Below are positions 1 through 55,015 of a DNA stretch of 64,000 nucleotides, piece after piece. The stretch is from Bugula neritina. Its lineage: Eukaryota > Animalia > Bryozoa. The position numbers and the translations under genes are program-made. How positions within the stretch are numbered: the first letter of the stretch is position 1; the number at the start of each line of letters is the position of its first letter. The DNA is taken from the NCBI GenBank assembly GCA_964035545.1, contig OZ037770.1, forward strand, positions 8,810,973-8,874,972. The letters run 5' to 3'. The notes below the pieces were generated by a model. It was not told the DNA's origin, made no database searches, and saw only the letters and a program-made list of their open reading frames with translations.

Positions 1-1284
1 ATTGGCAGTGATTGCAGATAGTTAATAGCTTTCACAAGATCCACTGTTTGGTTATTTGTTGCACCATCATTATAAAACATCAAACACCTCTTTATCACGG
101 CAAGTAACAAAATTGAAAGAGTTCGGTAATTTATTGTGTCTTTGCATAATTTAATTACTTTGATGTTTTTATTACTGTATAGTTAGTTAGTGTAAAGTTA
201 TTTGTAGCAGCTATTAGAGCAAAAATGTTAATTAAATTGTACTGGTTTCAGAGACTGCATCTTGTGTAATTTAGGAAAAATTCTAGGATCAGCACTGAGC
301 TTAGGGTGACTGAGTGCAGAGTTTGCATCGACATACCTGTTCAAGCTATAAATTCCAACCAGTGCACTCAGCGATCACCGATGCAGTGCTGCTTCTAGCA
401 ATACTCATAGCCTGAAGTGAGACTTTAGTTAGCTCTCCCTCTATAAATCAGCCATCTTTTTAAAGGCTAATCTAAATAATATCATGTAAAATGAAAAACT
501 CACAACTGCTAAGAAAATTGTTGTTCTGCGGCTTTAAACCACAAAGTTGAGTTTTATTTTCTCCATAAAAATATTAGTTTAATATAGATTGGCATAAATT
601 TTAAAAAATAAATATTGCATCTAGGACCTACATACTTGAGTTGTTTTATTGTGCTACCCAGGGATGTAGTGGTAAAAATATTCTTGGCCATACTCTCAGG
701 CCGGGGGTCCAGGGGGCAGCCTAGGCCCCCGGCGGGGTCCGGGGCAGCGCCCCGGCGCCGAAGCCCTCAGAGCACTTCTGATGCAAATTTATGCAATTTA
801 AAGCCATTGCGAATTATAATTCTTCTGATAAAAATCTGTGTTGAAATGTGCACCTCGCTATTATTTTCATACCGTACCAGCTACATGACGACTGGGCATT
901 GCTGCAAACTATATAAATATTCAGTCTTGTCCTATACCTGTTGACTGTAATGTAATGTAATGTAGTCTTACTCAACTGCAGTTAGGTTTATTCTGACACT
1001 TAGTCCAACCTGTACAGAAAAATTGCTGAATATCTCAAAAAGATGGAAGGATAGAGGCAGGTAACAAGTGCTCTCCAAATGCAACCTGATTACTTTAAAT
1101 AACTAATACAGTGCCGTGCACAGAAAAAGAATAATAGATCAGAACAGAGGAAGATTGCTAATCAGAAAATGTGTGTTGGTTAATTATAAAGAGCAATTTG
1201 AGTTGATAACTCATTGGCAAGCAGAAATTGGTTGAAAACCTATTTGGAGTTTATTAGAGTACTAGTCTAATTCATAAGGTGATA

Positions 1285-2606
1285 GGGGTAATGGGGGGGG
1301 GGGCACAACGGGCCGAATTTTGCATTTGTTGCTCCCATTCGTCTGTTTTTCAAATTACTAGTTCAATAATCTCTAGTCTTAATGCTGCATCTGTTGTCTA
1401 TTACAGGTACCAGTTTGTTGTTTCTATCTCTCTCACAACTTTCAGAATAATGAAATTTTCATGACGAAAAAATTGGCCCATTGTGCCCCGGTACCGGGTA
1501 CAATGGGCCGCTGGGTGGGACACAACAAATATATTGAAACTTTGCGTATTTTGTTACATCTGATCTTTATTTATTTAATATTATAAATAAATAAAGATAC
1601 TCTTTCAGGTCTACAGCAAAATTCATGTTTTAGCTGTACAGTTTGTACCACCACAGATAAAAAGGGGGGACAAAATCAAGCGCACATCACTCATTTCTAC
1701 GGTACCAGTTTCATTACTGTTTAGAACTAAAAATGTTTTTTCTATTTTCACTTCACAGGAACTTTCATCAGAAAAAACTTTAGTAACATGTACTATAAAA
1801 TTCCGAGTGGACTTTTTTCTATGAACTGTAGCTAAGGTGCATGCATGGCTGAGGTTTGTGACTGGAGTACGGAAGAGAGAGGGGGGAGCAAATGAGCAAA
1901 TCACAATTTATTTTAGTCAAATACATGTATATTCCCTCAATGGTGTAATATATAATGATTATCATGACTATCTACTAGTAGTAACAGCAGAGTGTTTTGT
2001 ATTATGTATAAAATGGCAAAGCTTTAACCTCACCAGATATATATATTAGGGGAGCTTCAACTTGTAGTTTTGTAGTCTTACCATGATGTCTTTGATATTT
2101 TACAAAAAGGTCAGAAATGGCTATATCTATAGATTTTAGTAACATTTCAACGAACTTTTTTGGCAAACAAACTAATAACAGTGATCAGGGTGCAATAATC
2201 AGGTGGCCCATTGTGCCCCGGTCAGCGTGGCCCATTGTGCCCCGTGTGGCCAAATTGAAAATAAATGTGCGTCAATGAAAATTTATTTCAGTGTTGGCTG
2301 TTATACTAGTTAAAAAATGTAGAGACAAGCAATGGCAACAATATTAGTAAAATCTAGGCTTCTTGCCTTTGAGTGTAAAAAGTTATAAAGCTTTAACGAC
2401 ATCCTAAAAAATTTACAAAAATTAGGTAAAAACAGTTTTTTACTCGCCTTTCCAACACGCATGTTCCGCAAGTGTTAAAACTACAAAGGCTGAATAATTA
2501 TGTCAATATCTTTTTATGAAAAAAAATCACAACTCTAGGTCAATAAGTTCTCGCACAATTTGGCCGGCTTTTTGTACCCCTATGATCGTTGTGCCCCCGT
2601 TACCCC
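1285..2606. mobile_element. Non-autonomous TA-TSD DNA transposon (pogo/Tc1-mariner-like) nested in hAT copy 1
   Basis: TIRs GGGGTAATGGG..GCACAACG / CGTTGTGCCCCCGTTACCCC flanked by TA (1283-84, 2607-08). Internal GGCCCATTGTGCCCCG repeats at ~1475, 2205 and 2229. Segment is absent from the homologous position of hAT copy 2. Confidence 0.85.
1623..1830 (-). pseudogene. Possible degenerate C-terminal fragment of a pogo-like transposase
   Basis: Translation KKSTRNFIVHVTKV...VEMSDVRLILSPLFICGGT resembles, by recall only, C-terminal tails of invertebrate pogo-like transposases. Lies inside the TA-TSD element. Confidence 0.4.
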
Positions 2607-4519
2607 TACCGCCACACCTCCTTACACACAATAAAGCACACCCAAGAAGAGTATGTTAACTTGGTTTTAAAATAAACCCCCCCCCCCCCTGAGCTTCCAC
2701 TAGATACATCAAGGAAATTTACTCCACAAGAACAAATTTGACAGGTTTAATATGTGTTAACCTACAAGATGATTAAATGTAAAGCCAGACGTTAGTACAA
2801 TCAAACATAAAAGGTTACTTATGGTGGTGTACAGTTTGCAAAACCTTATTGCATTGATAATTAACATGCAATAATGCTAGGTTTTTGACAAAAATGTGGA
2901 TATAGTACCTGTAGACCTCAGTGATAAATTTTCATTAGCCTCCCCTACACACCCGGTACTGTTTCTTGAAGACATTTTGATTTTATTTCTGGATTTCATG
3001 TTGGTTTTTTTCCAAATTCCATTGCTTATTGACAAAATGCAAGTTCACACAAGATAGATAAGGGCAACCTTCTATAGCTGTCAGTGCCTTGCTGAGGCCA
3101 CATTATTGGTATATTATAAGAATTCAGTCCAGCCAAATAAAACCTCACTTAATTGTGCTAGAATTAAAATTTAAAAACCATGTTTTAGATCTTCCTGTTC
3201 CTCAGAGCACCTGCTTTTTTGAGTTTTCAATATTTTTTTGCAAAGTTATCGACAAAAATCTACCCATCTTTGGCCAATTTTACCTGAAAAATTTATTTTT
3301 CAATCCCTGCCAAATATCTCAGCAGGAAAGCATGGTATTCGAATAGAACAAACACTGTCGGAAACCTGAGAAATTTATGCATGGTAAATTTTTTGTTCAG
3401 TCTTTTCAATAGCCTTCATAGATTTTCTACAAGTTAGTGATTTATACACTGAAAATGAAAGATTTTTTCCTTAGTAATCACCAATGCACAGCACTTCGCG
3501 CTTCAGTGAACACGTCGAGATAAGAAGATGCAATGTTGATAGCTGCATAGTAATCATAGTGTAATCTCAGGCTAAACAATCACAAGTAGGCAACACGCAT
3601 GCCACCCACATAGCATTAACATAACAAGAACTTAAGTTAGATTGTGAGCGAAATTTATGATATTCTCAGTGAGGATGCCCAAACTATCCTGTGCACTGAT
3701 CATCTTTCAAAAATATTTATGCCCATACGGGCGTATGGCCTAGAACAGTCTATTTTCTTCTAGGCCATACGGCGTATGGGACCGTATGGGTACCACTACA
3801 TCCCTGGTGCTACCAATGCGTCCATGCTTTACTGTTATATTCACATTTAGCTGCACACAATAATTATTTCTAACAATCTATACCTATACTTTGAGTAATA
3901 CGTACATATGATGAATATTTATCGGTGCAGACTTTATAATTAAAGAAATCTAATCATAACAATTCTTCAATCTCTTGCTCTACCGCCAGCAATGTCAAAA
4001 TAACTTAACACTAAGAGCATTTCAAGTGTGCAGCCTAACAACGTAGTCTATCATCTTTTCAATACAATTCTTAGACTATTTTTACAATTGATATGTCTTA
4101 TGATGATTTATGGCTTCCAGAAATAGGCAATAGCTTATGAAACATCATTATCCTGCAAGATGAAATTGTTTCATAAGCTGATGTCATGACATCGGATAAA
4201 ATATTGTTTTTATAAGTATATCTCTATCTCACATAAAGAAATATAATTTAGTATAAAGCACAAACTTAACATTTACTTAAGAGAGTAAAATTTATGTTTT
4301 ACATTTAGAATCACCTCGTCCCCACAGAACTGAATGCATCTGTTCAAGATGATTGTATGGTTTCATCCTATTGACATAGTCATCATGCACTGAATGAATA
4401 ATCCGTTCCCCTAATACAAGTATGGGGCTGTAGCTAACTAATCACACACTGTGGCAGTTGTACTATATATATGTCATTCAAAACAACGTAACAGGATATG
4501 CATTTATATCAGGTTTTAA

Positions 4520-5748
4520 GGTTGGATGCCTAAACAATTTTGTGTCATAATTAATTTTGTGGGAGTATGTACTAAAATTATTTGGGATTTCTGATCGTCT
4601 GGAAATGAAATGTTCATTCGGCTTCCACTTTACCACTACTATATAGGCCTACCTTATACTAATTATAGCTAATTTTTATTGCACGCTATTGTTAGCTGCT
4701 GCACTGCACAGCATAATCACCGGCTTTCCATGTACCGATCTCAGATCGATCTCGCTGAGATCGATCCATGGAAAGACGCTAAAGATCGATCTCAGTCGTT
4801 CTGAGCTGGTCGGTCTGTAGAGCTCGAACTCAGATCGATCTCAAGGCAATAAGGTCATGGAAAGACGAAAGTTCGATCTGAGAAATAGAAAAAGACTGTT
4901 CGCTAAAATGTCGCCGCTAATAAAAATGATAATTTATTGGTAATTACTAAGCAAATTACTTAATAATTACTATAGCCACATTTTCAGATGCCAAAACTTT
5001 GACTTTCAGTACTATGATTAAACAAACTCAATTATATAAAATTATAGACGGTAGAAGGTGGAAAAAGTAGGAGCATTTAAATTGAATTTAAATGGCTAGT
5101 AAAACTTACTTTCATTAGTTATTTGCTGCTTATTTTTAAGCCCAATAGTCCTGTAAGTTTATGAATAATCTGCACAACAGCTATTAATTTTATATAAGCT
5201 GTCAAACTAAAATATTAAAATGAATTATCTTAAGTTGGCTAAATTACTTTTTACTAAAAGCTTTACTGCGTAGAGTTTATAGCTGGCACTGAATTTTAGA
5301 CTATGGAAATTTTGTTTTTTCAAAAGCATTAGCTTGAATCACCCAGGTGGGTTAAAAAATATAATATTAAAGTACTCTTCACTTAAGAGGAGGCAACTCC
5401 GCTAGATCGATCTGACACTCTCATGGAAAAACGATCGATCTGATCAGCACATTTCTCAGATCGATCTCAGCGAGATCGATCTGAGATCGGTACATGGAAA
5501 GCCGGTGAATCACTCATCACAGTTCAAAGTTTAAAGTTTAAAGCCATACCAGTGATTGTGCTGTGAAGCGCAGCAGCTAACAATAGCATGCAATGAAAGT
5601 TAGCTAGAATTAGTATAAGTTTTATAGTATAGTGGTAAAATCGAAGCCGACTGAAAATTTTGTTTCCAGGCGATTAGAAATCCCAAACCATTTCAGTACA
5701 TACTCGCACAAAAATAATTATAAAACAAAATTGTTTAGGCATCAAACC
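4520..5748. mobile_element. Palindromic MITE with TTAA TSD (Kolobok-like), interrupted by element 4718-5507
   Basis: ~200-bp imperfect inverted arms (4520-4717 vs ~5550-5748) with GG...CC termini. TTAA at 4516-4519 and 5749-5752. Confidence 0.8.
4718..5507 (+). mobile_element. MITE with CAC termini and 3-bp TSD (AAT), copy 1
   Basis: ~48-bp perfect TIR CACCGGCTTTCCATGTACCGATCTCAGATCGATCTCGCTGAGATCGAT. AAT duplication (4715-17, 5508-10). Multiple AGATCGATCT palindromes. Second copy at 45556-47068. Confidence 0.88.
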
Positions 5749-8022
5749 TTAAAACAGTATGCAACTGAAAACTAACATAATTATATAAGAATACTTTAGT
5801 ACTGCGTAAGTGAAGTGTGTCAGGGATTCTTTAAGGATTGGAAAGAGTGTTTCAAGTTTACTGACAAATTATTGTAGTACTCTAAAAACCATAATAAAGA
5901 AATATAAGTTTAACGGTGATAAATTTAAAATACCTAATTATAAATTTAAAGTTGAGACAATGTTTACCATAAAAGTTTGAAAACCTTTATATCAGTTTGT
6001 ATTGATATGACATCAAATGCATTTTTAAACAAAATTTAATAATACTGAAATTGTGCTCAATCAAATAATATTAAGTAGGTATGCATGTCTCTCTTTTTGA
6101 AGGTCCAATTCAAGGGTATCAATTTTATTGAAAGAAACGTTTATTTATAGATGACAGATCAACCATAATACTGAGTTTCAATAAACCTGCTATCATGATA
6201 GCAGATCACACGTCTTTTCTTGCAGTCACACATTTTGATGCAATTTTAAAGACTTGTATGCCAAGTTTCTAAAGACATTAATTGCCAAAGTCAACAATGT
6301 CTTTGAACTTATAGGCCAATAGCAGCACACACCAAATACCAATTTTTTTAAATGCTTTCATATCACAGAGTGTATACCAAGCATCTTTTAAAGTTGTTCA
6401 AAGATGAGGTGTATAGTATAATCAGGTACCATGAATCAGGTAACTTCAAAAGGTGCACCACGACAACACTTAAAATAATAGTATATTTACCAAGTTGAAG
6501 CTGCATTTATACCTTCACAATTTACAGTCAGAAATTTAATTTGGCTGAGTTGAAATTCCTTGGAGTTGCCACTTGTCAAAGTTTTTGTACTGTGATAACT
6601 TAATCGGCTGAGTTCAGAATGCATGATACTCAAAAGGAGTAATAACTCTCTGTATAAATATTGTTATATGATTATGACTTTGTCGATTAGATGATGTATT
6701 TATATGATATTAATCATATTGCCTGCGATTTTTCCATTATCGCTTTTATACTGTCAACTTTACTAATTCACGACGTTTCCAAAAGCATCAAATAACAATT
6801 AGACGAGTCAGATTTCACTTTTAGAAAGTAAGCTTTCGCATCAATATGGTTTCATCAAGTTTCATGAGTTTGATTATAGAGGAGCACTCAAATGAGTGTT
6901 ATTAACTGAAACTTGGTAAACTGTTCAGGCATTTTTAGTAAATATTGTTAGAAGATATAATTTTTATACAAAGATTTTTATAATAAACATAATAACATTT
7001 TCTGATAGCTTACGGTACTATTTTTAAATGTTGAAGATAAACCGTGATTCATTAGGTTGTTTTTCTAAGTGCTAAAATAACATCTAATTATAAATCTCTA
7101 TAAATCTATAAACACGAGTTTGATTGGACGCTGTTATTACATAGGTCATCTAGGGCACAAAACCTGTATGCTATGTGAAATGACTGCAAATATTTTGCTG
7201 CTTCATTGAATTATCTTATAGAAGTAAATAGATTAGAGTTTAGGAAGCAGTTGCTGGAGTAAAGAAGTTTTTCTTCCTCTACTGATATCGTCATTTGCTT
7301 ATTTACATAATATACTGGTGACATAATGTGGGTTAATAATAGCATAATAACAGTTGCTATATGCCATTGGCTGTCAAACTTTCTTGTTTAAACTAACTAG
7401 AGACCAGATATATCTGCACTAACTTCATATATCTACACCTGCCGCTGTAAGAGTTGCGAGAACACAACAATCAGATATTACCCAAGACTGTATTAAAATA
7501 AACATCATTGTTTTTATTGCTTATCTGGGGTAGAATTCTATAGTCAATTTTTTTTTAAGAAGGAAACACTTTTTATCATAAATATCTTTCCAATGTTAAA
7601 AATACTGAGATGATAGAAACTATAACATGGCCACATTTTGCTGCTTTGAATACTACCACAGCATGCATGTAACTGCAAACAGCTAGAAACTCATGTAATA
7701 AAATGAGTTGAAAAGTTTTGCACTCACCTAAATACATAATTATTGAAAGCATGGTAAATGAGTCATTAGAAGGAAATTTTTAAGCCTCTTTCAACTCCCA
7801 ATACAAACAGGTAAGTTGTGGTGATTGCGACATATGGCTTTTGTATTTTTGCCAAAAACACACCCAGCAAAGTGTGCCAAACAGATAAAAATATAAGCCA
7901 ATAAGGAAATAATATTTTTCGATTCAACTCTGGTGTATATCACTCAAGAATTTGAGCCATTAATCAGTTATCTCACATAAAACTGTTAGGGTGAACAGTA
8001 AAGGGGTTTGGTAGAATTTTGG

Positions 8023-8029
8023 TATAAAA
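8023..8029 (+). promoter_or_regulatory. Putative TATA box of the secreted peptide gene
   Basis: TATAAAA just upstream of a short non-coding exon ending at a strong AG|GTAAGT donor (8082/8083). Acceptor TTGTTACAG ends at 8357, before ATG 8391. Confidence 0.55.
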
Positions 8030-8390
8030 TCAGCTGAAATCTCTCATATCTTCACTTGTACACAGCCTGTCTTTGAGTGAAGGTAAGTTTCTAAATGTTC
8101 AGATCTTTAAATTAATACTTCCAGTAAAATCGAAGTGCTTAAAAATAGGTTTAAAGACAAAAGATTACATGCTTCAATTAAATAAAAATTTCAACATTTC
8201 CTATAATGCACACTTTGTAAATTAACAGTTGTATTCTATTTTCTGCTTTAACATATTGAATAGAATTAATGTTGTATGCCTTAAAACTCATTATTAGAGT
8301 TTGGAGTTGTTATACTAAATATTGGTGCATTCAGCAAGCTTTTGCATATTGTTACAGAAATATCGCACAAGACAACTTGATTGAGCAGAG

Positions 8391-9094
8391 ATGAAGCCTG
8401 TGAATGTACTGTTGGTAGTGATGGTGATAGCCATGGCTCTATTGTCCACCTCACATGCTTCTGGTTACAACAGCTTCGGTCTGAGATCCCACAGAATAGT
8501 TAGTTATATAACTTTATTTTGTAGACATTAAAATGAAATAAAAATAAATATTAACAGTAGATCAAAGCCAAAGATAAGCATGCGGTTTAAACAAAAAATT
8601 ACATTATCTACTAAAAGAAGTACTGAATAGAATTATTTTTCGATTACAAAACAATGCTCATTTACATTATCGCAAATATAATTATATATTATGTGTTTTA
8701 CTATTAAATGAATAAAATACATGATTTGAAAATTAGATAAATATTGGAAAAGTACATTATAAGTTAGATAAATAAACAGGTAGCTTAAAATTCTTAGCTA
8801 TGGATAACTGCATTGACAAAATAAATAGGAATTTTTTTTATATCTGATCAAACTATTATTATAATCTTAAAAAGGCGATTTGATTGGATAATAAGATGAT
8901 ATGTTTATACCCAACCTATTATGTTACAGAGTTACTGCTGCAAGTATGGCAAGGTTCAAAGAAAGATTTGTCTCGGCCTCCATTGGGGAGGATATGCTCC
9001 AAGATGCCACTATACCTACAGCACTGTTTGCAAGAAGTACTGCTATCGTCCCATAGTGAGAAGACGACCCATCAGCCACAGACCACATTACTAA
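8391..9094 (+). CDS. Small secreted cationic cysteine-rich peptide (90 aa; candidate antimicrobial or adhesive peptide); coding exons 8391-8498, 8930-9094
   Basis: MKPVNVLLVVMVIAMALLSTSHA-SGYNSFGLRSHRI | SYCCKYGKVQRKICLGLHWGGYAPRCHYTYSTVCKKYCYRPIVRRRPISHRPHY*. Phase-0 GT..AG intron 8499-8929, signal-peptide-like N-terminus, AATAAA at 9336. Confidence 0.85.
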
Positions 9095-10241
9095 ATGCTT
9101 TATGCATTCTTTATTCAGATCTATGTGTGGCCACTATGTATTCCATACATTGCTTTCTCTAATTTTACATGATAAATTGATTCTGTTTTGTTTTAAGCAA
9201 TTGTTTCTATTTTGTTTTAATTTGTTAAATTTTAGTTATTGTTATACTGTGAACATTCTTTTTGGATTTTGTAATAATTGTTTTTTATTGAAAGTTTTTC
9301 TGTAGAAATTTAAACACTAGCTATAGATATTGCTTAATAAAGTATAAACACAATGATAACCAACCATAACTTTCAATTGCTATTTATTACGTTACTTATA
9401 AGACCTAATAAATTTAAATAATATGCAACAAACTATAGGTATATACACAAAAAATTATTGCACACCTATGCACACACATGCACATATACTGTAAACATGT
9501 GTATACATGTACATGTATAAATAAGCATATTGAATAATTTAATTTTTTTTGTCAATTGCAGCAGAAATAATTCAAAATTTTTTTAAAGTTGTCCAATATT
9601 TAGAAACGTCTACAATTATTTATAATATTACATAGACATAGTTTGCTGTAATTTAATGTAATTTATTTATAGAATTTTTAAACAAAAACAATAATTTGGC
9701 AGTTTATTTTCTTATGACTCGGGTTTGGATGCAACAAAGTATGAACAACACAATCTACAAAAAATAGCAAAACATGAGGTAAAAGCTTTCAATAGCGTTT
9801 ATTGTACTACAAATATGAATAATCAAGATGGTTTTCAAAACTCACAATAGAAAATATGAGGCTTTGTAAAAAGATTAAACTATATACAACAATTAAGAGT
9901 TTCTAACTTATAAGGGTAGTTATTAAAAGAAAACTTACAGTAATGATAAAGCATTTTGTGCAAACTATATAATTATATTTGATGGTTATTTTTAGAGTAA
10001 GTTTCAGTATTTTATCAGAGTCTGGGAAAGTTAGATAAAGGTTTTAACATAAGACTTAAGATATACAAATGTAGAAGTGAAGCTAAGATATACAAACGTA
10101 GAAATAAAGCTAATTTATACACATGTGCAAGTGAAGATAAGCTATACACATGTAGAAGTGGGGACAAGAATATATACACATCTGGAAGTAGATAGAGAAG
10201 CGTGGTTTAGCTATGCACATGTAAAGGAAACTTTATTCTTA

Positions 10242-15256
<5,015 letters not shown>

Positions 15257-16210
15257 GTTTTTCTCAGGTAAAAACTAAAACACTTTTAGTCTGTTCAACA
15301 CACATTTGTAAAGTGTATGTATAGTAAAGTGTTGTAGCTTGTTTTTCATAACAATGTATAATTTGGCTTTGCAAAAAAGGTTATAATAAAGCAGAGCTTT
15401 TTTAGATTGCTTGCTTGAAGTAGCTTGGTTGACTATTATACAGTCTATATTATATTTGCAAATTTTTGAGCTAAAATCGTTTTGAAAATGAATTGTATCA
15501 CTGACTCCATTTACATAATATTCATGAATCCCTATCTGTGTATGCTTACATTAGTAACATGGGTTGACAATGCTACTGTAAAAAAGATACTTTTAAAATT
15601 ATTTTAACACATGTACGCTGTGCTTCATGTCATTGAGGCGTATTATTTTACTGAATACAAATACTTATACACATCTAATGCATTTATAATGTATGTGAAT
15701 ACTTATTTTGCTAATAATATCTGAAAGCAAAGTGAAGACTTGCCATTGTGCTAAAAAGGTTGTAAGACAAATGCAATTAGTGACATATGTCTGTTTAATG
15801 ACCACGAGTACTTCAGAAGTTAAACAATTGGACTTTGATTAGAATACTGTAAAATTTTATTGAACTTTTAAAAATAGTTTACTAATGATAGTATATACAT
15901 CTATTAGTTAATGCACGTGAAATCAAAATTTGTTTTTATAATAGTATTTTTATAGAACATTATAATATTTTGTATTATAATGTACTACTGAGCTATCAAT
16001 TATATACAGTCATTATATAATATTTTACATGAAAAATGGTAAAAGTTGTGTTTCACAAATGATCTTACAATTAATTTATTGCATATACACATTATTACGA
16101 AATTCACTGTATATAGCAAACACCTATAATAAAACATTTTGTTATAATATTTCATTATTACTATCAGAAGTTGTGCATATAACATTTTAAAAGGCCTGTG
16201 TTCCCTGTTT

Positions 16211-19200
16211 TTATTTACTTGTTTTGCTATAGCGCTCAGCTTGAGTCAAGCTACTCAAATTGGAATTGACAATTCTCTGCAAAGCATGCACATAGGCTTT
16301 ATAGTTGACATCAAATCTGTGAAGCTTCCCTGAGGGAACTTCAGACACGCATTGTCTAGACTCAACGTCATCAGCAATTCCTCTTCGTCCTTTGTTGGTA
16401 GCCTCACTTTCACACCGCCGGCTATCTTTGAGGTTTGGTAGACTCCGCACACCACTATCCCGCCTTTGTGATCGGGACTTGTGTCTATAGGAAGAACTGG
16501 GTTTTCTTTCGTCGACCACCGGTGTGTCTATGCAGTGTTGGATAAACTTTTTAGCTTTTTCTACATCTGATTGGCGCTTTCTTTCTTCGTGTTTAGATAC
16601 TTTTCGTGAAGTCCTTTTGGCCTGATATTTCTGCTGAGTATCACTTTCATCGCTGCTATTATCAGATCCATTTGGAAGATAAGGTTCAACCAATTGAGGC
16701 AAGTCATGTAAAGTAAAGGATTCTATACCATCATGTGTTTTTACTTTCTTTCTTTGCTTCTGCTTCGTTGGACTTATTGTCGTGTTATAGTTTGCATTTT
16801 CCTCTTCTACAGCATCTAGTTTCTCAAACTTTTCCAAAGATCTTCTCAACCTATTTTCGTCAGGCTTCTTAATTTGTTTTAGTTTGGCTTTCGCTAGATG
16901 TTTTATTTTTGCTAATTTTGCATCACTGATTTGAGGAGCTGGTTGCACTTGTGCATCTTTCATAACAGAGCTTTCATTATCTAATTTAGTTTTGGATACA
17001 GGTAAAGGAAGCCTACTAGTGGTTTTCTCACCACTCTCAAAGTCGTGCTCTTTGACAAATAGCGATCTTTCTTTAAAACTATTGCCATACTTTTTTCGAA
17101 CAACACTGTTATTGCATTGGTCACATCTGTTTCTTTCATTCCCATGTCTACATGTGCTTTTGATCTCAAAACTTATTGGAACGTTAGATTCTACTCCAGC
17201 ATCCGAATCACCGGCACTAGACTCGTCTTCTCTTGTTTGTATACTAAACGACACTTTCTTAGTTAATGTTCTTTCACTGGGTTTTGGTGGTGAGGTAACT
17301 GTTTTACTAGAATATGGCACTAGAGAACGGGTTGAGGATTTTATCCTTTCTAGCAAGGGGTCCGAGGAGGCTGATTCTTGCTTTAGGGATTCAGTTTGAG
17401 TATTGGAAGTTGCTTTTTTATTGCAGGTGATGAGTTTGGTACTCAGTCTATCAGCTTCGTTAGTTTGGGTGTAACTGTCTAGCATGAGAACATCAGGAAT
17501 GTCTATTCTCTTGTCTTTTTCAGCAGCATGTTCTTTAGTCTGAGCAGCTGAAGTGGATTTACTCACTTTTTTTGGCCTTGCACTCAGTTCACGTTCCTGA
17601 TGAAGCTAAAAAATATTCCACAAACATGTACATTGCTGAAGCATAGCAGTTGTTGAAATATATCACTACTAGAAATATATTAGTTGAAAATCTCTTCAAA
17701 TTATAATAAATATTATAAGTTTAAATATTCAATCTTGACCAGGAAAGAGGATACAAAAGTGATATACAATTGTATGCATGTATAAGAGATAAAGGGAGCT
17801 GATAATTGCACTCACATTATAATATACAAAACGCAATTAAATGCCACCCAGACTCTATTTACTAGCACTTAACAATTTATATTGAGCACAAATGCAATTT
17901 ACTTTAATATTAGTATTTGAAAAGGTTATATAAAACACATTTGCAAATATTTATAAAAATGAGGTTGTTACTTAAAGCATCTCACAGTATTTAGCACTTC
18001 TTTAACATCAGGTTACCTGTTGGGGTTTTTCCAAGTCTGATGTAAGTTTGGGAGCTGTACTTTGTACTTCTTCATTGGGAGAGTTCCTTTTTTTGTCATA
18101 TTCTAATTGAAGCTTATGATTTTGTTGCCATGGTGAAGAAGCAACAGGCTGACTTTCCGCCACATTTGACTCCCTATAAATGTAATCAAAATAGTGATTA
18201 TATAATATGTACACTAGATTATACAATACTTATAAGAATTATCATGACTATATTATGCATTTTAAAAACAATAAAGCAGCATTGTGCTTATAGTCTAGAT
18301 TATACATCACAATTTGCAAATGAAGTGGTTTCGTTTATGCAATAATAAAAAATGTTGTTAATTAAATATGATTTTGATTACATATATTATTGTAACTGCA
18401 ATAAAATGCTTTTTTTTAAGGAAAAAGTTTGAGAGATTAATAAGCCATTTATGACAGCAATACAGTATTTTGGTCCTTAGTAAGAACCATTTATATATGA
18501 TGTTAGAAAGGGCATGCAGTTATAATGGTTCTTTCGGCACAATATAAAACAAGTTCTTGGTTCACTTAAAATAAACCCTTTTCATCAGAGGTTCTCACAG
18601 GGATGGCAACTATATATATACCTATGTGAGTGTTTATGATAGCTGCACAGCCCCATATTTTTCAGAGCCTTACAACACTAAGCATGGTGGTAGTGCAGCA
18701 AACTATGTGCACACCAACTTCATACTGTTGCTTAAACCTATTACATTTTTGATATAATGCAAACAGCTCGATGGACTTCCAATATGTGTGAACATTACCA
18801 CCATGCCGATGCAGATAGATTAGCCAGTACACAGAATAAAGCACATGCTTAAACAGTTGACCAATCAGAAGGAATATTCAAAAACGGAAAGTGATCTAAC
18901 TTACCAAATGCTATAAAACATGCTTCACCATAATATTTTGTTACAGAGAGCTAATTTATAAAATCTTTATGAGATATAGTAAGACATGAAAGTCGCTAAA
19001 TGTCCCTATAGCTCACTACTCAGTTCCTTTATTAATACGAACCCTATAATGTTGCATAAAGTATCAAGTAGCACAAAACTACTAATATACACTTTAAGAA
19101 TAGTTAAAATTGCATACTATATTCTTCAGTTTTATTTGCAGTAGTTATACAGCTTCTATATCTCTATAACTACATATTTCGTACTTATCTAATTATTATA

Positions 19201-19312
19201 ACATCCAACTAAACAGACTGGCGATATGTCAAAGCATAGAACTTTATTTGTGCAACATAGGACTTTTTGTCCAACATTTGGTTATTAAACTTGCTAATAA
19301 ATATCATCACTG

Positions 19313-19375
<63 letters not shown>

Positions 19376-22300
19376 CATATACATATATGACAATGCAACT
19401 TGTTTGCAAAACCATTAAATGCTTACAGTTTCAAATGGGTTGTTAATATGTGATTGAGATTTCAGCATTAATGCAGTGTTGAATTCATTCTCTATAAAAA
19501 TTAATTTTGAAATATTATTTTAAATCATCATTTTACTGATGAAATATGTTACTAGCCATTGTCAGATACACTAGCATCTATTTTCTAAAAGCAAAAATTT
19601 ATCTACGTACAATAGTAGGGATACAATAAGCATGCATGCTATATGGCACGAGAGAAGGCCATCAACCAATGAAAGTACTAAGAACATCTACCCAAGTGTG
19701 CTGCAGAATGATTGAAATACTATAAACTATTGCATAACATAAACAGTTGAGTTGAACAAGCTGTCAGGTATTAAGGTACAACACTAAAATCAATGATGCA
19801 TATAGTTCTACACTAACTCCCACTAGTGCCCAATAAATATCTAAAGAAAATTTACCTTTTTCTAATGTCCCAATAGCTGTAAAAAGATAGTGAGTTAAAA
19901 CACGTGAAGCTTCTACAGTGTGAATGAAATATTATAGAACAGAAATAGTGGTTAAAAGTTGTGGCTCCAATGGGTTTCACAAACAATTAAACTAAATAAA
20001 TATATTAAATATAACAATGGTTAGCAATTTGACTTTTATGACTATTTTAATTAAACTGAAATGTTGAGCTTGATAGCATTTTAAATGAAATGAGGATAAA
20101 AACAACCAGCTTATGAAAAATGTGATATAAACTGAGAATTCTTATGTTATTTGCTAATTTAAATAGCTCTGAATTTTATGATAAGTATTGAATAAAAATT
20201 TTCTTCAAAAATTAAGAAAATAACTCTTGACTTTAAGCTGAATTCCAAATTAATTTTAGTTATGATAGGTCAACAAAAGTGATGGTTTACTCAAGTATAA
20301 AAATATTTTGCTAATATATTATCTTTATATTAAATCACTTGAGCTTGTCCTGAACATAATTGGAAACATTTTATTGAACTAGTCTTATTGAACTAGTTCA
20401 TAATAATAATATATATATCAATAATTTTTCGCCCCTCAACTTTTTAAGGCTTTACTCAAGTAATAACAATACATATTATTACAATATTGATACCTTAATA
20501 ATTAATTATTTGACTTTTTCTGCTTTGTAAAATTTACAAGAATTCGAAGAATTCCTTCTAGACACCTCAATTAATTATGTAGCTAGCATATTATTATAAT
20601 ATACAATAGCTCACCATAAGTTATTGAAAACACAACTACACTAGGGAAAAAAGTAGTTATAAGCCTGCAGGTTGCTTATAGCTACTCTTTCAATAATACA
20701 ATAAAAACTATTAGCTACGGCTGCTGTATACAACATAGCCGGCATGCTGTATGCAGTTATATGGCATGCTATAGTGATATAGTCTGCTATATATAAGTTA
20801 TACTGTAGCTATACTGTGTATTAGTAGTTTCTTAATGCATACCCATTTTCTTTGCACCATTTTGAGAACGCCTCTTTGTTTACTTTGGAGTTACCTTCTT
20901 TAAACTTATTAGCACCAATATTGACCAAAGCCTGAAATTTCTTCTGCAAGTCGGAGGAGTTTAAAGGAGGATAACTTTCTTTTATATCTCCATTTCCTGT
21001 TTTAAATGTTCCATATTGATATATGCATGTTCATGCATTCTGCTCACTACTAAATATATTACATGCATGAAAACTGACTGGGCATCATGCAATGTAATTA
21101 AAGCAAAATATATTCAAGATAGCAGTATATTCAAGATACATGTATAGCAATATATTCAAGATACATGTAGCATAACCACAGTTGCTAGATATTACTCATA
21201 TGCTACAAACAATCCTATATCTTGTAAGCAAGCCAGTGTGCTAACCATTACACTGTAGGAGCTATTAAGAATCTGAATACCGCATATACATATATCTATA
21301 ATCTTGTAAACTTTTGTTTGCTGACTTATATATATTATATCTTGCATATCATAAACATCCTATCCTATCACCTATCCCTTGGTCGAAACAACCGTTGGGG
21401 CACCACTGTTGATCTTTGCAACCAGCTATCATAAACATAGCAACCGTAAACTCTACTTCTGTTTCATCAACGTTTACTAATATTTATCTAAATAAATGTA
21501 AAAGTGTTATTTTATTGACATATTTAAAGATATTTTACTTGTAAACCTTAACAAAAGGCAGAAATATTCTAGTTTGTGTGTTGAGTTTTTTATTCAGTAA
21601 GAATAGAAGTGATAAAACTTTTGATCTGTAATGTGCTGTTGGACTACTATTTAGCAAGAATACGAAATTGGTAAATGTTGAACCAGAGGAATGTATCAAA
21701 GGGGAGAAGAGGGGAAGTTACTTTGGTATCGAAAGTTTAACAGGCAGCATGTTGCATTATTTCAAGCCAGAAGTGATGCCATTGAAGAGGATACACAGTA
21801 GCATCATGCAATAATATTCTATAAACAATGTACTGTCAGGAGTGGACAACTTACTGCTGCCATCATTTGATTGAATTCTCTTCTTGAGCAGCTTAGTTTC
21901 TAGCCCATACTTGGAGATTGTTTCTGTATACATTCCTGTGTCATCATCACTCTCATACTCAGGATGTGATGTCACTTCCTTTACCGACTTCTTTTCAGGT
22001 TTGTCCCGACCTTTGTGCTTCTTTTTGCTTTCTACAGAGAAATGATTCTTACTGAAATGACCAAAATTATTTTGCTATAAAACCGCATTATGCAACCCTA
22101 TTGGTTGAATAATTACATATTTAATATAACATTTACTGTAGTGCCTATATGTTTGGTAGCTGATATACACATTAATTTTTATTAAAACATGTTTGCAATG
22201 TTGTAACACTTTTTATATAACTTTATATTAAACTTGTGACCAGTACCAGCATGTGTAGCCTTTCATTATCTTAATTATATACATTGAAGAAATAACTTGT

Positions 22301-50969: not shown

Positions 50970-53900
50970 ATGGAGGAAGTTATAAAACAACTTGTAACAA
51001 CAATGCAGCAACAACAGCAGCAGCAGATGGAGCAATTCGCTCAAATACTGGGACAATTTACTACAGCTGTAAAGCCTGGTGAACCTGCACAAAATAAATC
51101 TGTAACTGTGCCTAGATTCGACTCTTATGACAGAGACAAGGAATCATGGACTCAGTATTTACAGCGGCTCAATCAGCACTTTACCGTTTACAACGTAAGT
51201 GACAGTGAACAAAAACGAGCTTGCTTACTTTCATGGATTGGCTCAAAATGTTATGAATTGCTGACAAAACTGTATGGCTCGGAGGACATAACTACCATGT
51301 CGTTCGATAATCTAGCAGGTAAGCTTAGCACACATTTTATTGAAACAAAACATGTGCAAGCAGCTAGATATCAGTTTTATAACTGTAAAATGAAACCTAA
51401 CCAGTCATACTCAGATTGGGCAGCTGATTTACGGGGTTTAGCTCGTAACTGCAATTTTACCTGTAAAAAGGAAGACTGTGGTGAAAGTTATGTTGATGAT
51501 CAAATCCGTGACATAATTATTAAAGAAACTCCACATGCTGATGTACGTAGACAATGCTTATTGGATCCAGATCCTACACTGGAAAATGTGTTAAAGAAGG
51601 CAGCTACATACATTCAAACAGCAGAAACTGATAAAGTTTTGAAGGGTGAGACCTCTACACCTGTTACCACAAATCAAATGTCCTCAACATACAAACATCA
51701 AAACAAAGGTAGTCAGGGCAAGAGACCACAATTTCACAAGTCTGAAAACCAGACTGCTATGCTAACACAGCCTTCCAAGTTGAAATCGTGTCCACAATGC
51801 TACATTAGCCACGATCGTAAACAATGTCCTCACCGTAACAAACAATGTAAGCTGTGCAACAAAACAGGACATATTTCTAGCGTCTGCAAAACTTCATCAA
51901 AATCAAGTGGGAACAACTCTCACTTCGTAGAAGAATCTTCAAGTAGTGTTTACAATATATATGAACGCAAGGGGAAACAAATATGGATTAACACTACTGT
52001 GAACAACAAACAAACACAATTTCAGTGGGACACAGGCGCTACTTGTTCTATGGTAGGGAACAAAGGCTACGAAGCTCTAGGCTCTCCACCATATTAACAG
52101 ACAGACATGACCCTTCATTCATATGGAAATACCGCTATGCAGGTACGTGGTGAATGCTATGTAACAGTAACCATTGGTCAGACTACAAAAAACAATCTTC
52201 GATTATTAATAGTAGACTCAGATGAAGGTGTCAACTTACTAGGTGTAGACTAGAGTGACAGTTTTGGACTATCACAACAGGGTCTATCCGCTGTAGACAG
52301 TGACACTGAGGTTACTAACGCAGTACACAATGTTGATACCAAGGTCAAAGTTCTCACAACAAAATATCCCGATGTTTTCAAACCTGGAATAGGACATTGT
52401 AAAACATTCAAAGTACCAATTTACCTCAAATCAGAACAGAAACCTTGTTTTTCTAAACCTAGAGAAATCCCCTATTCTCAACATGAGGCCACTAGGGCTG
52501 AATTAAACAGGCTTGAAGCTGAAGGTGTCATACAACGTATTAACTTCAGTAACTGGGCCGCTCCTATAGTAGTGGTTACCAAACCGTCTGGCAAAGTTCG
52601 CATCTGTGGAGATTTCAAGCGACTCAATCAGTGCATCTCCATAGATCAGCATCCACTACCAAAACTGGATGATTTAATGAACAGGCTTAGAGGAGGTAAA
52701 TTCTTCACCAAACTTGACTTGGCTGATGCTTACCTACAACTTGAGCTAGAAGATGATGCCAAACAGCTGTGTGTGATAAACACTCCATTCGGATTATACC
52801 AATATAATAGAATGTGCTTTGGAATTGCCCCTGGTCCAGCTCAGTTTCAACGGTGTATGGATACCTTGACTCAAAAATTACCAGGAGTTGCTGCATACCT
52901 TGATGATTTAATCATTACTGGTAAAACGGAGGAAGAACACTGGACTAATCTGACAAACCTGCTTTCAACACTTCAAGAGCATGGTTTTCGAATACGATTA
53001 GACAAGTGTGAATTCTTCAAGCACTCTGTTGAGTATCTGGGTCACACCATCGACAAGGATGGCAAACGACCAACACCTGCTTTCATGGCAGCTCTCTCTC
53101 AATTACCTCGACCACAGGACTTGCACCAACTGCAAGCATTTCTAGGAAAGGTTAACTACTATGGGCGCTTTATCTCTAATCTTGCGGATAAAGCAGCTCC
53201 ACTGTACAAGCTCCTCAAGAATGATACCACATTCACATGGTCAAATGAATGTGAACAAGCCTTTACCCAGCTGAAGAATAGCATTATCAATGCTACTAGC
53301 CTGACACACTATGATGAGACAAAACCGCTAATTCTTGCAGCCGATGCGTCATCCTATGGATTAGGAGTTGTTCTCTCGCAGGATACTGATCAGGGAGAAG
53401 TTCCAGTGGCTTACGCTTCAAAAACATTGACTGACACTCAAAAGAACTACTCTCAGATTGAACGTGAAGCTCTCTCTATTATATATGGTGTGACCAAGTT
53501 CAGACAATTCCTATATGGACGACATTTTACGCTAGTCACAGACCATGAGCCTCTCACTACTATTTTTGCACCAGGCAAAAATATTCCAACTTTAACAGCA
53601 CAGCGTTTACAACGCTGGGCTCTCACTCTGATGGGTTTTCAGTTTACTATCAGGTACAGGAAGACCTCCCAACATGGGAATGCTGATTGTCTTTCGAGGT
53701 TACCATTTGGTCCTGATAGCAATTTTGACCGGATCGAGCAGCAGGACAACAAGGAGGTATCCCATGCAATACAAGAGCAAATATTTACATCACCTGTTGC
53801 TGGATACAATGAGGTCAGACAGGAAACTGTCAAAGATCAACACCTTCAACGTGTCATAACATGGATTCAGCAAGGTTGGCCAGTCACAAAACCAGATGAC

Positions 53901-55015
53901 AAAGAACTGGGCACTTTCTGGATTCACCGTGACTCCCTGCAACTTGAACAAGGTGTCTTGTTGTTGATACGCGAACAAACAAGCCGTGTAGTTATACCTC
54001 GTTCACTTCAATGCAGGATACTAGACACACTTCATTCTTCACACTGGGGTGTAGTCAAGGTAAAGCAACTAGCTCGCCGCTATGTGTGGTGGAGCACCAT
54101 CAACACGGATATTGAGCTAGCTATAAAATCTTGCGAAGTATGCCAGGAGTCAGCAGCTGCTCCAGACCAGAAGTTTCAAAGCTGGCCCAAGACAGACAAG
54201 CCATGGGAACGCATACATTTAGATTTTGCTGGACCTTTTAGAGGAAAAATGTGGCTTATCTGCATTGATGCTTGTTCAAAATTTCCATATATTGGACGCA
54301 TGGAAATAGGGCAGACAACTTCTCGCCAAACGGTACAAGTATTAAAGGATATCTTTGCTATAGAAGGTGTACCTGCTACTATAGTTACAGATAATGGCCC
54401 ACAGTTTTCCAGCCAGGAATTTACTAATTTCTGCAACAGTTTCCACATCAACCATGTCAATTGTCACCTCCATACCACCCACCTTCAAATGGTGAAGCTG
54501 AACGATTTGTCAGAACTTTTAAAAGCTCTGTGGACAAGAATTGTGAGGGAGGAGCATCTCTAGACGAGAGTATCAGACTTACATTAGCATCATACAGAAC
54601 CATTCCACATCCTGCTTTGGAATGGAAAACACCTGCAGAAGTCCTGCATGGCCGCCAGCCCAGAGGCTTACTATCCCTTCTCCAACCTACTAATCACAAA
54701 TACCCTAAACATGACAAGCCACAGACAACACAGTTCACTATTGACTCACTAGTGTACGCTCGTAACTACAGTACTGGTCCAAAGTGGATCCCAGGAACTA
54801 TCATATCAAAACAAGGAAATGCTATCTACATAGTACAAACAGACAGTGGCAACTGGAAGAGGCATGCTAATCAGCTTCAAATTCGCCTTCCATCTACAAA
54901 TATGAACAAATCAGTGGTACCCAACACACCCCAAGCTGATAATAATATTGTCCATCCTCATGAGAGGCGCTATCCAACCAGAGAGCGCAGACAGCCAGAT
55001 TGGTACAAGCCATAA
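50970..55015 (+). pseudogene. Disrupted gag-pol polyprotein (CCHC knuckles, protease DTGA, RT YLDD, RNase H, integrase HHCC/DDE)
   Basis: Single frame interrupted by TAA 52095-97 and TAG 52251-53 in the protease region and by a frameshift near 54459-60 in integrase. Motifs: CKLCNKTGHISSVC, WDTGAT, AAYLDDLII, DASSYGLG, HLDFAGP, TDNGPQF, SNGEAER. Confidence 0.93.

What the first reader, a model, noticed from the sequence alone, without database searches (positions are those of the whole stretch)
8023..9341. Hidden gene for a secreted, +14 cationic, six-cysteine peptide (candidate novel antimicrobial or adhesive peptide family)
Seen: a complete compact gene absent from the ORF track, with a TATA box, non-coding exon, signal-peptide exon, mature-peptide exon and AATAAA. 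The predicted 67-aa mature peptide has 9 Arg + 5 Lys, no Asp/Glu, 9 Tyr and 5 His. Its cysteine array is CC-x9-C-x11-C-x7-C-x3-C, followed by an Arg/Pro/His tail (RPIVRRRPISHRPHY). I do not recognise this spacing as CS-alpha-beta defensin, big defensin, macin or knottin. Inference: the spacing suits a laddered beta-hairpin (C1-C6, C2-C5, C3-C4), as in tachyplesin/protegrin-type AMPs. The Tyr/Lys/Arg richness also fits a DOPA-type marine adhesive protein.
Basis: partly seen in the sequence, partly recalled or inferred. Interest (0 to 1): 0.85.

Follow-up and report, generated by a model that had tools for sequence, protein, structure and literature searches.

The report
Orphan cationic six-cysteine peptide gene
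A small three-exon gene of the moss animal Bugula neritina encodes a secreted, very positively charged peptide with six cysteines that resembles no described family. It is conserved in a sibling species and looks like a defence peptide, but neither its expression nor its activity has been shown.

Summary

The gene is more than chance. The collinear locus of a second, roughly 20% diverged "B. neritina" assembly keeps several features:
- the TATA box, both GT/AG introns, the frame and all six Cys;
- no indel in 273 coding bases, against 19 in 1128 non-coding bases;
- substitutions of 9/6/24 by codon position;
- dN/dS of about 0.16.

That assembly already annotates the gene, with the same exon 2/3 junction, as hypothetical protein EB796_020006. 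So it is "hidden" only from ORF lists.

It is single-copy. It has no Pfam or PDB match, and no relative among 1.8 billion representative proteins or in JGI metagenomes.

Two AlphaFold runs gave pLDDT of about 49 and contradicted each other, so the beta-hairpin ladder is untested. No RNA run was available, so transcription and splicing are inferred.

Best reading: a lineage-restricted, disulfide-stabilised cationic host-defence peptide (about 0.4). The rivals are an adhesive or cuticle protein and another kind of secreted ligand.

This scan earlier reported a roughly 18-gene array of cationic six-Cys peptides elsewhere in this genome. I found no sequence link between it and this gene.

The parts
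8003..8029 (+). Conserved promoter-proximal block ending in the TATA box (TATAAAA at 8023-8029)
   Evidence: One search shows the sequence. In alignment A1 the block is almost invariant between the two assemblies. 8023-8082 is 93% identical, against 78-81% for the flanks and introns.
8054..8082 (+). Non-coding exon 1. The start is inferred about 31 nt after the TATA box at an Inr-like TCACTT. The donor GT is at 8083.
   Evidence: the donor GTAAGTTT is identical in both assemblies. The transcription start has not been observed.
8083..8357 (+). Intron 1 (GT..AG)
   Evidence: It is 78% identical with 14 gap columns, so it evolves as non-coding DNA.
8358..8498 (+). Exon 2: 33 nt of 5'UTR plus 36 codons starting at the ATG at 8391
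   Evidence: The orthologous exon has the same length and frame. The annotated B. neritina protein P0001 uses the same donor.
8391..8459 (+). Signal-peptide coding part, residues 1-23. It has a charged n-region (MKP), a 15-residue hydrophobic core and a small-residue c-region ending S-H-A, with the predicted cut before Ser24.
   Evidence: Read from the translation by the -3/-1 rule. No signal-peptide predictor was on hand.
8499..8929 (+). Intron 2 (GT..AG, phase 0)
   Evidence: It is 81% identical with 21 gap columns.
8930..9094 (+). Coding part of exon 3: 54 codons plus the TAA stop
   Evidence: It is 83% identical in protein to P0001:27-80 with no gaps.
8936..9043 (+). Six-cysteine core, CC-x9-C-x11-C-x7-C-x3-C
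   Evidence: All six Cys and their spacing are invariant in the orthologue. dN/dS is 0.17.
9044..9091 (+). Arg/Pro/His-rich C-terminal tail of 16 residues with three R-P steps. Its last residues are the most variable part of the protein.
   Evidence: columns 49-52 differ between the two species.
9095..9341 (+). 3'UTR ending in the polyadenylation signal AATAAA (9336-9341)
   Evidence: AATAAA is also present at the aligned place in the orthologous locus. The poly(A) site has not been observed.

Best explanation
This is a genuine single-copy, three-exon, TATA-driven gene of Bugula neritina, on chromosome-scale scaffold C6 at about 8.819-8.820 Mb. It makes a 90-residue precursor. A 23-residue signal peptide sends it into the secretory pathway. 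The released peptide is 67 residues, or 55 if the conserved R-S-H-R site just before the first Cys is cut by a furin-type convertase. It is held together by up to three disulfides and carries about +14 charge with no acidic residue.

The most likely role is a lineage-restricted host-defence effector. The cationic, aromatic-rich disulfide core would bind and perturb anionic microbial surfaces. The short Arg/Pro tail would add binding or uptake, as in two-domain crustacean peptides. Targets could be fouling or pathogenic microbes, or the colony's own bacterial symbiont population.

Shown: gene structure, conservation, purifying selection, and absence of known relatives.
Inferred: transcription and splicing, signal cleavage, disulfide formation, and all function.
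For: Gene reality:
- The orthologous, collinear locus in GCA_010799875.2 keeps the TATA box, both donors and acceptors, the ATG, the frame, the stop and AATAAA.
- There are no indel events in 273 coding nt against 19 in 1128 non-coding nt. Poisson P(0) is 0.01.
- Substitutions by codon position are 9/6/24, p = 0.0008.
- dN/dS is 0.16.
- In a DNA run from another individual, both coding differences (8477, 8953) are synonymous, while 11 substitutions and 3 indels fall in introns and UTRs.
- AUGUSTUS with transcriptome hints independently called the same exon 2/3 junction (PMC7576161).

Secretion: the N-terminus has the classic n/h/c signal-peptide layout.

Defence-like character:
- pI is about 11.2, charge about +14, with six invariant Cys.
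- It is a compact TATA gene.
- It is an orphan, taxon-restricted gene, as many invertebrate AMPs are.
- Pairing a Cys-rich domain with an Arg/Pro-rich stretch is an architecture known from penaeidins and arasins (PMC11678341).
Against: - No RNA run was on hand, so no transcript or splice junction was seen.
- No activity data exist.
- The structure could not be predicted (the Atlas model has pLDDT 0.59), so the disulfide pattern and any amphipathic surface are unknown.
- dN/dS of 0.16 and single-copy status are not the diversifying, multi-copy pattern typical of many AMP families.
- A charge of +14 with 13% Tyr and 7% His is also what adhesive and cuticle proteins look like.
- The tail has no Pro-Arg-Pro motif and is only 25% Pro.
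- Protein databases hold few bryozoans, so 'no relatives' is a weak statement within the phylum.
Confidence: 0.4

Rival explanations
1. It is a structural, adhesive or cuticle protein. In this reading a small basic Tyr/His/Cys-rich secreted protein is cross-linked, through DOPA or quinone, di-tyrosine, Cys-quinone or His-metal bonds. The site would be the larval or rhizoid cement, or the chitin-protein (lightly calcified) zooid wall.
For: - Composition: Tyr 13%, Lys+Arg 21%, His 7%, Cys 9%, no acidic residue.
- Mussel interfacial proteins are likewise small, basic and Tyr-rich. Mfp-3 is 5-7 kDa with 26 mol% cationic residues. Mfp-6 has 20 mol% Tyr and 11 mol% Cys (PMC5132118).
- Purifying selection and single-copy status suit a structural role as well as a defence role.
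- Earlier notes of this scan list several arrays of small cationic Tyr-rich secreted proteins in this genome. This suggests a lineage habit of making such materials.
Against: - It lacks the Gly/Asn richness of Mfp-3 (Gly 25-29, Asn 10-18 mol%). Here Gly is 9% and Asn 1.5%.
- It lacks the 23 mol% anionic residues of Mfp-6.
- Tyr content is well below the 20-30% of DOPA adhesives.
- Six Cys at a strictly conserved spacing point to a folded disulfide domain. Free thiols or a disordered glue are less likely.
- There are no repeats.
Confidence: 0.22
2. It is another kind of secreted bioactive peptide. Candidates are a signalling ligand or hormone-like factor, a channel-blocking or deterrent toxin against predators or competitors, a protease inhibitor, or a polyanion (nucleic-acid or glycan) binder.
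For: - Small disulfide-rich secreted peptides serve all these roles in invertebrates (general knowledge).
- Strong purifying selection on the core (dN/dS 0.17) and single-copy status fit a ligand with a fixed partner.
- Possible convertase sites, R-x-x-R before the core and a tribasic site in the tail, are conserved.
Against: - There is no similarity to any toxin, inhibitor or hormone family in Pfam or PDB.
- A charge of +14 with no acidic residue is unusual for receptor ligands and inhibitors.
Confidence: 0.2
3. It is not a functional protein-coding gene. The signals would be a chance arrangement, a non-coding transcript or a recently dead gene.
For: - No transcript evidence could be obtained.
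- Coding identity (84-88%) is only a little above intron identity (78-81%).
- The only 'annotation' is a de novo prediction.
Against: - The frame, all splice sites and all Cys are kept across about 20% neutral divergence.
- There are no coding indels (P = 0.01), third-position bias is significant (p = 0.0008) and dN/dS is 0.16.
- The core promoter and exon 1 form the best-conserved block of the locus.
Confidence: 0.08

Closest known systems
Penaeidins (shrimp) and arasins (crab): two-domain antimicrobial peptides
   Same: They are secreted and cationic. They combine a six-Cys (penaeidin) or four-Cys (arasin) disulfide domain with an Arg/Pro-rich extended stretch. They are taxon-restricted (PMC11678341).
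   Different: - The domain order is reversed: here the Cys core comes first and the Arg/Pro tail last.
- The tail is only 16 residues, 25% Pro, without a Pro-Arg-Pro motif.
- The Cys spacing is different.
- There is no Pfam match.
This is analogy only.
Plant thionins, such as crambin and purothionins (from my own knowledge, not tested by alignment)
   Same: They are small basic peptides beginning with an adjacent CC followed by four single Cys.
   Different: They are found only in plants and the loop lengths differ. From my own knowledge Pfam has a thionin model; the Pfam-A scan gave no match to any family at E up to 10. The fold here is unknown.
Defensin-type peptides (CS-alpha-beta, beta-defensin, big defensin, macin)
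   Same: They are secreted, cationic host-defence peptides with three or four disulfides.
   Different: In beta and big defensins the CC pair is at the C-terminal end, whereas here it is N-terminal. The Pfam-A scan returned no family at all, and from my own knowledge Pfam holds models of these families. There is no PDB sequence match.
Mussel foot proteins Mfp-3 and Mfp-6
   Same: They are small, secreted, basic and Tyr-rich. Mfp-6 is also Cys-rich (PMC5132118).
   Different: This peptide is not Gly/Asn-rich, has no acidic residues, has lower Tyr and has a fixed six-Cys array. No homology could be tested, because no reference sequence was on hand.
Array of about 18 cationic six-Cys 'hairpin' peptide genes elsewhere in this genome
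   Same: It is in the same species and describes the same kind of product: small, secreted, strongly cationic, Tyr-rich and six-Cys, in no known family.
   Different: Whole-genome searches with each coding exon, with the two-species profile and with the gene's DNA found no paralogue. This gene is a singleton on another scaffold. Any relationship lies below the detection limit or is convergent. I could not read that array's sequences.

Membership tests
Any curated cysteine-rich AMP or toxin family in Pfam (defensins, big defensin, macin, thionin, penaeidin, hepcidin, knottin or conotoxin types) | Significant match to the family profile | tested here: not met
   hmmscan of each coding exon against Pfam-A at E up to 10 gave 0 families. 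That these named families have Pfam models is from my own knowledge.
Any family with a solved structure | Sequence match to a PDB chain | tested here: not met
   phmmer of the exon 3 peptide against 177,635 PDB sequences at E up to 10 gave 0 matches.
   - AlphaFold2 on the exon 3 peptide with a 2-row alignment gave pLDDT 49.2 and strands.
- AlphaFold2 on mature P0001 gave pLDDT 48.8 and helices.
- The Atlas model has pLDDT 0.59 with no TM of 0.5 or more.
- No fold search was run because the models are unreliable.
Penaeidin | N-terminal Pro-rich domain followed by a C-terminal six-Cys domain; restricted to penaeid shrimps (PMC11678341) | tested here: not met
   The order is reversed, the animal is a bryozoan, and there is no profile match.
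DOPA-type interfacial adhesive proteins (Mfp-3, Mfp-5, Mfp-6) | Tyr/DOPA of about 20-30 mol% with Gly/Asn (Mfp-3) or acidic plus Cys (Mfp-6) bias; found in adhesive secretions | tested here: not met
   Tyr is 13%, Gly 9%, Asn 1.5% and acidic residues 0%, compared with Table 1 of PMC5132118. DOPA and localisation cannot be tested here.
Secreted protein (classical signal peptide) | n-region charge, hydrophobic core of at least 10 residues, small residues at -3 and -1 | tested here: met
   The translation shows Lys2, a 15-residue hydrophobic core and S-H-A before the predicted cut. This was read by rule and not by a predictor. It is conserved in the orthologous exon.
Protein-coding gene under selection | Frame, splice sites and Cys conserved; dN/dS below 1; third-position bias; no coding indels | tested here: met
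Expressed, spliced mRNA | Reads across 8082^8358 and 8498^8930 | not testable with these tools
   The only run found (X1) consists of DNA-type contigs that run unspliced through intron/exon borders. No RNA run was served.
B. neritina cationic six-Cys array (scan note s1-475709) | Detectable sequence similarity to array members | tested here: not met
   Own-genome searches returned only the gene itself. The weaker hits share a single CKKYCY-like word and nothing else.

The most novel reading that the evidence does not exclude
The peptide founds a bryozoan-specific class of gene-encoded antimicrobial peptide with a new three-disulfide fold (N-terminal CC clasp plus Arg/Pro tail). The colony would use it to police surface microbes or its bryostatin-producing symbiont. 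Two marine-invertebrate AMP reviews listed (PMC12466427, PMC10608444) do not contain the word 'bryozoa'. If true, this would therefore be among the first host-defence peptides described for the phylum Bryozoa.
Probability: 0.2. Interest if true: 0.7.

Novelty: new variant of a known kind. Interest (0 to 1): 0.42.

Why it matters
Bryozoans are a major fouling phylum, and B. neritina is the source of the bryostatins made by its bacterial symbiont. Almost nothing is known of their gene-encoded immune effectors. A conserved, orphan, extremely cationic disulfide peptide is a cheap candidate to test, since 55-67 residues can be synthesised. It could give a new antimicrobial scaffold, a handle on host control of the symbiont, or a new small wet-adhesive or cuticle component. 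The case also shows that such genes escape ORF-based tracks. The interest is moderate, because orphan cationic Cys-rich peptides are often found by genome mining and nothing functional has been shown here.

Tried and rejected
1. Paralogues in the window (tblastn and blastn) and in the whole 216-Mb genome: none. The weak hits L002 and L027-L030 share only a CKKYCY-like word and lie in non-genic open frames.

2. A back-translated Cys-spacing DNA pattern on the whole genome. It was swamped by TG/TGC microsatellites, with 1447 hits against 332 for the control, and was uninformative.

3. An exhaustive phmmer of the natural full-length orthologue P0001. Two extra hits, P0002 and P0003, are long internally repetitive ORFs. 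Their scores come from summing many weak repeats, and their Cys do not align. I rejected them as relatives.

4. A JGI metagenome scan: 501 word matches, none confirmed.

5. The ESM Atlas: no feature hit, and structure neighbours all have TM below 0.5 and are heterogeneous.

6. Structure prediction twice: low confidence and contradictory. I therefore ran no fold search, because matches would be meaningless.

7. RNA evidence: only a DNA-type run was available.

8. Literature: no paper on this protein and none on a bryozoan gene-encoded AMP.

9. Neighbouring ORFs: no Pfam domain that hints at function.

The exons were searched separately by reference. The deposited orthologue P0001 served as the full-length query. 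The two translated pieces were put side by side once, inside a script, only to count residues.

Full report
**What is there.**
The window is low in G+C (27-43%). It belongs to a 216,009,554-base genome in 321 sequences. That matches the Darwin Tree of Life assembly of the bryozoan Bugula neritina: 216.00 Mb, 320 scaffolds plus the mitochondrion (PMC11480708).

- TATAAAA at 8023-8029.
- A donor AAG|GTAAGT at 8082/8083 and an acceptor ending at 8357.
- An ATG at 8391 with A at -3 and G at +4.
- A second donor at 8498/8499 and a second acceptor ending at 8929.
- A TAA stop at 9092-9094 and AATAAA at 9336-9341.

Exon 2 encodes 36 residues and exon 3 encodes 54, in phase 0.

The first 23 residues have the classical signal-peptide layout: Lys2, a 15-residue hydrophobic core, and S-H-A before the cut. 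The remaining 67 residues hold 9 Arg, 5 Lys, no Asp or Glu, 9 Tyr, 5 His and 6 Cys. Calculated mass is about 8.0 kDa, pI about 11.2 and charge about +14 at pH 7. The Cys spacing is CC-x9-C-x11-C-x7-C-x3-C, followed by a 16-residue Arg/Pro/His tail.

The only adjustment is that 8023 is the TATA box. Exon 1 probably starts near 8054, which is an inference. The two coding pieces are ORFs of 46 and 57 aa. That is why an ORF track with a 60-aa cut misses the gene.

**Is it a gene?**
A search with the exon 3 peptide found one protein: hypothetical protein EB796_020006 of B. neritina (P0001, 80 aa, 85% identity). It comes from the 2020 draft genome. There, genes were predicted by AUGUSTUS with transcriptome hints (PMC7576161).

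It starts at the internal Met11, but the upstream in-frame ATG and the full signal peptide are conserved in that locus too.

The two loci are collinear over about 15 kb. They are only about 78-80% identical in non-coding DNA. The two "B. neritina" assemblies therefore most likely represent different cryptic species of the complex described in PMC11480708.

This divergence makes the comparison informative:
- 8023-8082 (TATA plus exon 1) is 93% identical.
- The introns are 78-81% identical with 14 and 21 gap columns.
- The two coding parts are 88% and 84% identical with no gap.
- Indel events number 0 in 273 coding nt against 19 in 1128 non-coding nt, with Poisson P(0) = 0.01.
- Substitutions fall 9/6/24 on codon positions 1/2/3, p = 0.0008.
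- Nei-Gojobori dN/dS, counted exon by exon and summed, is 0.16. It is 0.17 for the Cys core.
- All four splice sites, all six Cys and AATAAA are kept.

The one public run that holds the stretch (X1) is DNA-like. Its contigs run unspliced through exon/intron borders and cover the whole 5 kb evenly. In X1 the only two coding differences (8477 C>T, 8953 G>A) are synonymous by my reading of the frame. Eleven substitutions and three indels lie in introns and UTRs.

I conclude that the gene is real with about 0.9 confidence. Transcription and splicing remain inferred, because no RNA run was served.

**What is it related to?**
No relative was found outside the orthologue:
- Each coding exon gave no Pfam family at E up to 10.
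- There was no PDB chain by sequence.
- An exhaustive phmmer of P0001 against 1.84 billion representatives gave only itself and two long repeat-built ORFs. Pairwise alignment shows these to be artefacts.
- JGI metagenomes gave nothing.
- The ESM Atlas gave no feature neighbour and only structure neighbours with TM below 0.5.

Within its own genome the gene is single-copy:
- Searches used both exons, the two-species profile and the DNA itself.
- The weak hits share a single CKKYCY-like word and nothing else.

One caveat applies. Few bryozoan proteomes are in these libraries, so the age of the gene within Bryozoa is unknown.

**Structure.**
- AlphaFold2 on the exon 3 peptide with the two-row alignment gave pLDDT 49 and three strands.
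- On the mature orthologue it gave pLDDT 49 and two helices.
- I ran no fold search on such models.

**How it probably works.**
The steps below are inferred from the sequence:
- The signal peptide is removed after co-translational entry to the ER.
- A conserved R-S-H-R just before the first Cys is a possible furin-type site. Cutting there would leave 55 residues.
- Up to three disulfides form in the core.

A +14, acid-free, aromatic-rich disulfide peptide with a short Arg/Pro tail is most simply read as a host-defence effector that binds anionic microbial envelopes. The pairing of a Cys-rich domain with an Arg/Pro stretch is known from penaeidins and arasins (PMC11678341). Here the order is reversed, and there is no homology.

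Three points count against a typical AMP:
- The gene is single-copy.
- It is under purifying, not diversifying, selection.
- Its composition also recalls small basic Tyr-rich adhesive or cuticle proteins.

Compared with Mfp-3 and Mfp-6, however, it lacks Gly/Asn richness and acidic residues. It also has less Tyr and a rigidly conserved Cys array (PMC5132118).

My odds are:
- defence peptide, 0.40;
- adhesive or cuticle protein, 0.22;
- other secreted bioactive peptide, 0.20;
- not a functional gene, 0.08;
- the remainder unassigned.

**Context from this scan.**
Earlier notes report other families in this genome:
- an array of about 18 cationic six-Cys peptide genes (s1-475709);
- arrays of Tyr/Lys/Arg-rich micropeptides (s1-472163);
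- small cationic TSR proteins (s1-442863).

I could not read those sequences. My whole-genome searches show no detectable similarity between this gene and anything else. It is therefore an independent singleton or a relative diverged beyond recognition. B. neritina evidently carries many small cationic secreted genes that ORF tracks miss.

**Novelty and score.**
The kind of molecule is well known: a secreted, cationic, disulfide-stabilised peptide. This Cys array and sequence belong to no described family, and no bryozoan gene-encoded AMP turned up in the literature searches. The orthologue is already deposited, uncharacterised. I rate it a new variant of a known kind, with interest 0.42. The gene model is solid and the function is open.

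The exons were used by reference, and the deposited orthologue was the full-length query.

Noticed in passing
window 18-19786 against L004 6076-20691: The two public 'Bugula neritina' assemblies are collinear here but only about 78-80% identical in non-coding DNA. They are the Plymouth chromosome-level assembly and the 2020 draft GCA_010799875.2. That is far more than within-species variation, since run X1 differs by about 1-2%. They probably represent different cryptic species of the B. neritina complex (Types S, D, N).
   Followed up: partly
L004 9971-10078 (B. neritina draft locus): The deposited protein EB796_020006 starts at an internal Met, residue 11 of the full precursor. A conserved in-frame ATG 30 nt upstream gives the complete signal peptide. 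The database entry therefore appears N-terminally truncated.
   Followed up: yes
window 11457-12363: There is a (CA)n/(TG)n microsatellite of about 900 bp. It produces six long spurious ORFs in both strands.
   Followed up: no
window 50970-55015: This looks like a Ty3/gypsy-type LTR retrotransposon. A 663-aa ORF carries RT, RNase H and integrase domains (E 1e-35 to 1e-10). It is preceded by a 375-aa ORF with a weak gag-like (PNMA) match. I observed it only and did nothing further.
   Followed up: partly
window 10242-10598 (-): This ORF has five tandem copies of a seven-residue unit (DSDTMQY-like). It lies just downstream of the peptide gene on the opposite strand. 10414-10641 is 89% identical to the sibling-species locus, so it may be an exon of the neighbouring gene.
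   Followed up: no
window 16110-19324 (-), including ORF 16211-17566: A large Ser/Lys-rich exon of 451 aa has no Pfam domain. It is 87% identical to the sibling locus and corresponds to a called 781-aa gene in L004. It is the nearest clearly coding neighbour, and its function is unknown.
   Followed up: partly
window 6500-6900 and 11343-11500: Contig depth in run X1 jumps from about 100 to between 10^4 and 10^5 at these places. They are therefore high-copy repeats in this genome.
   Followed up: no
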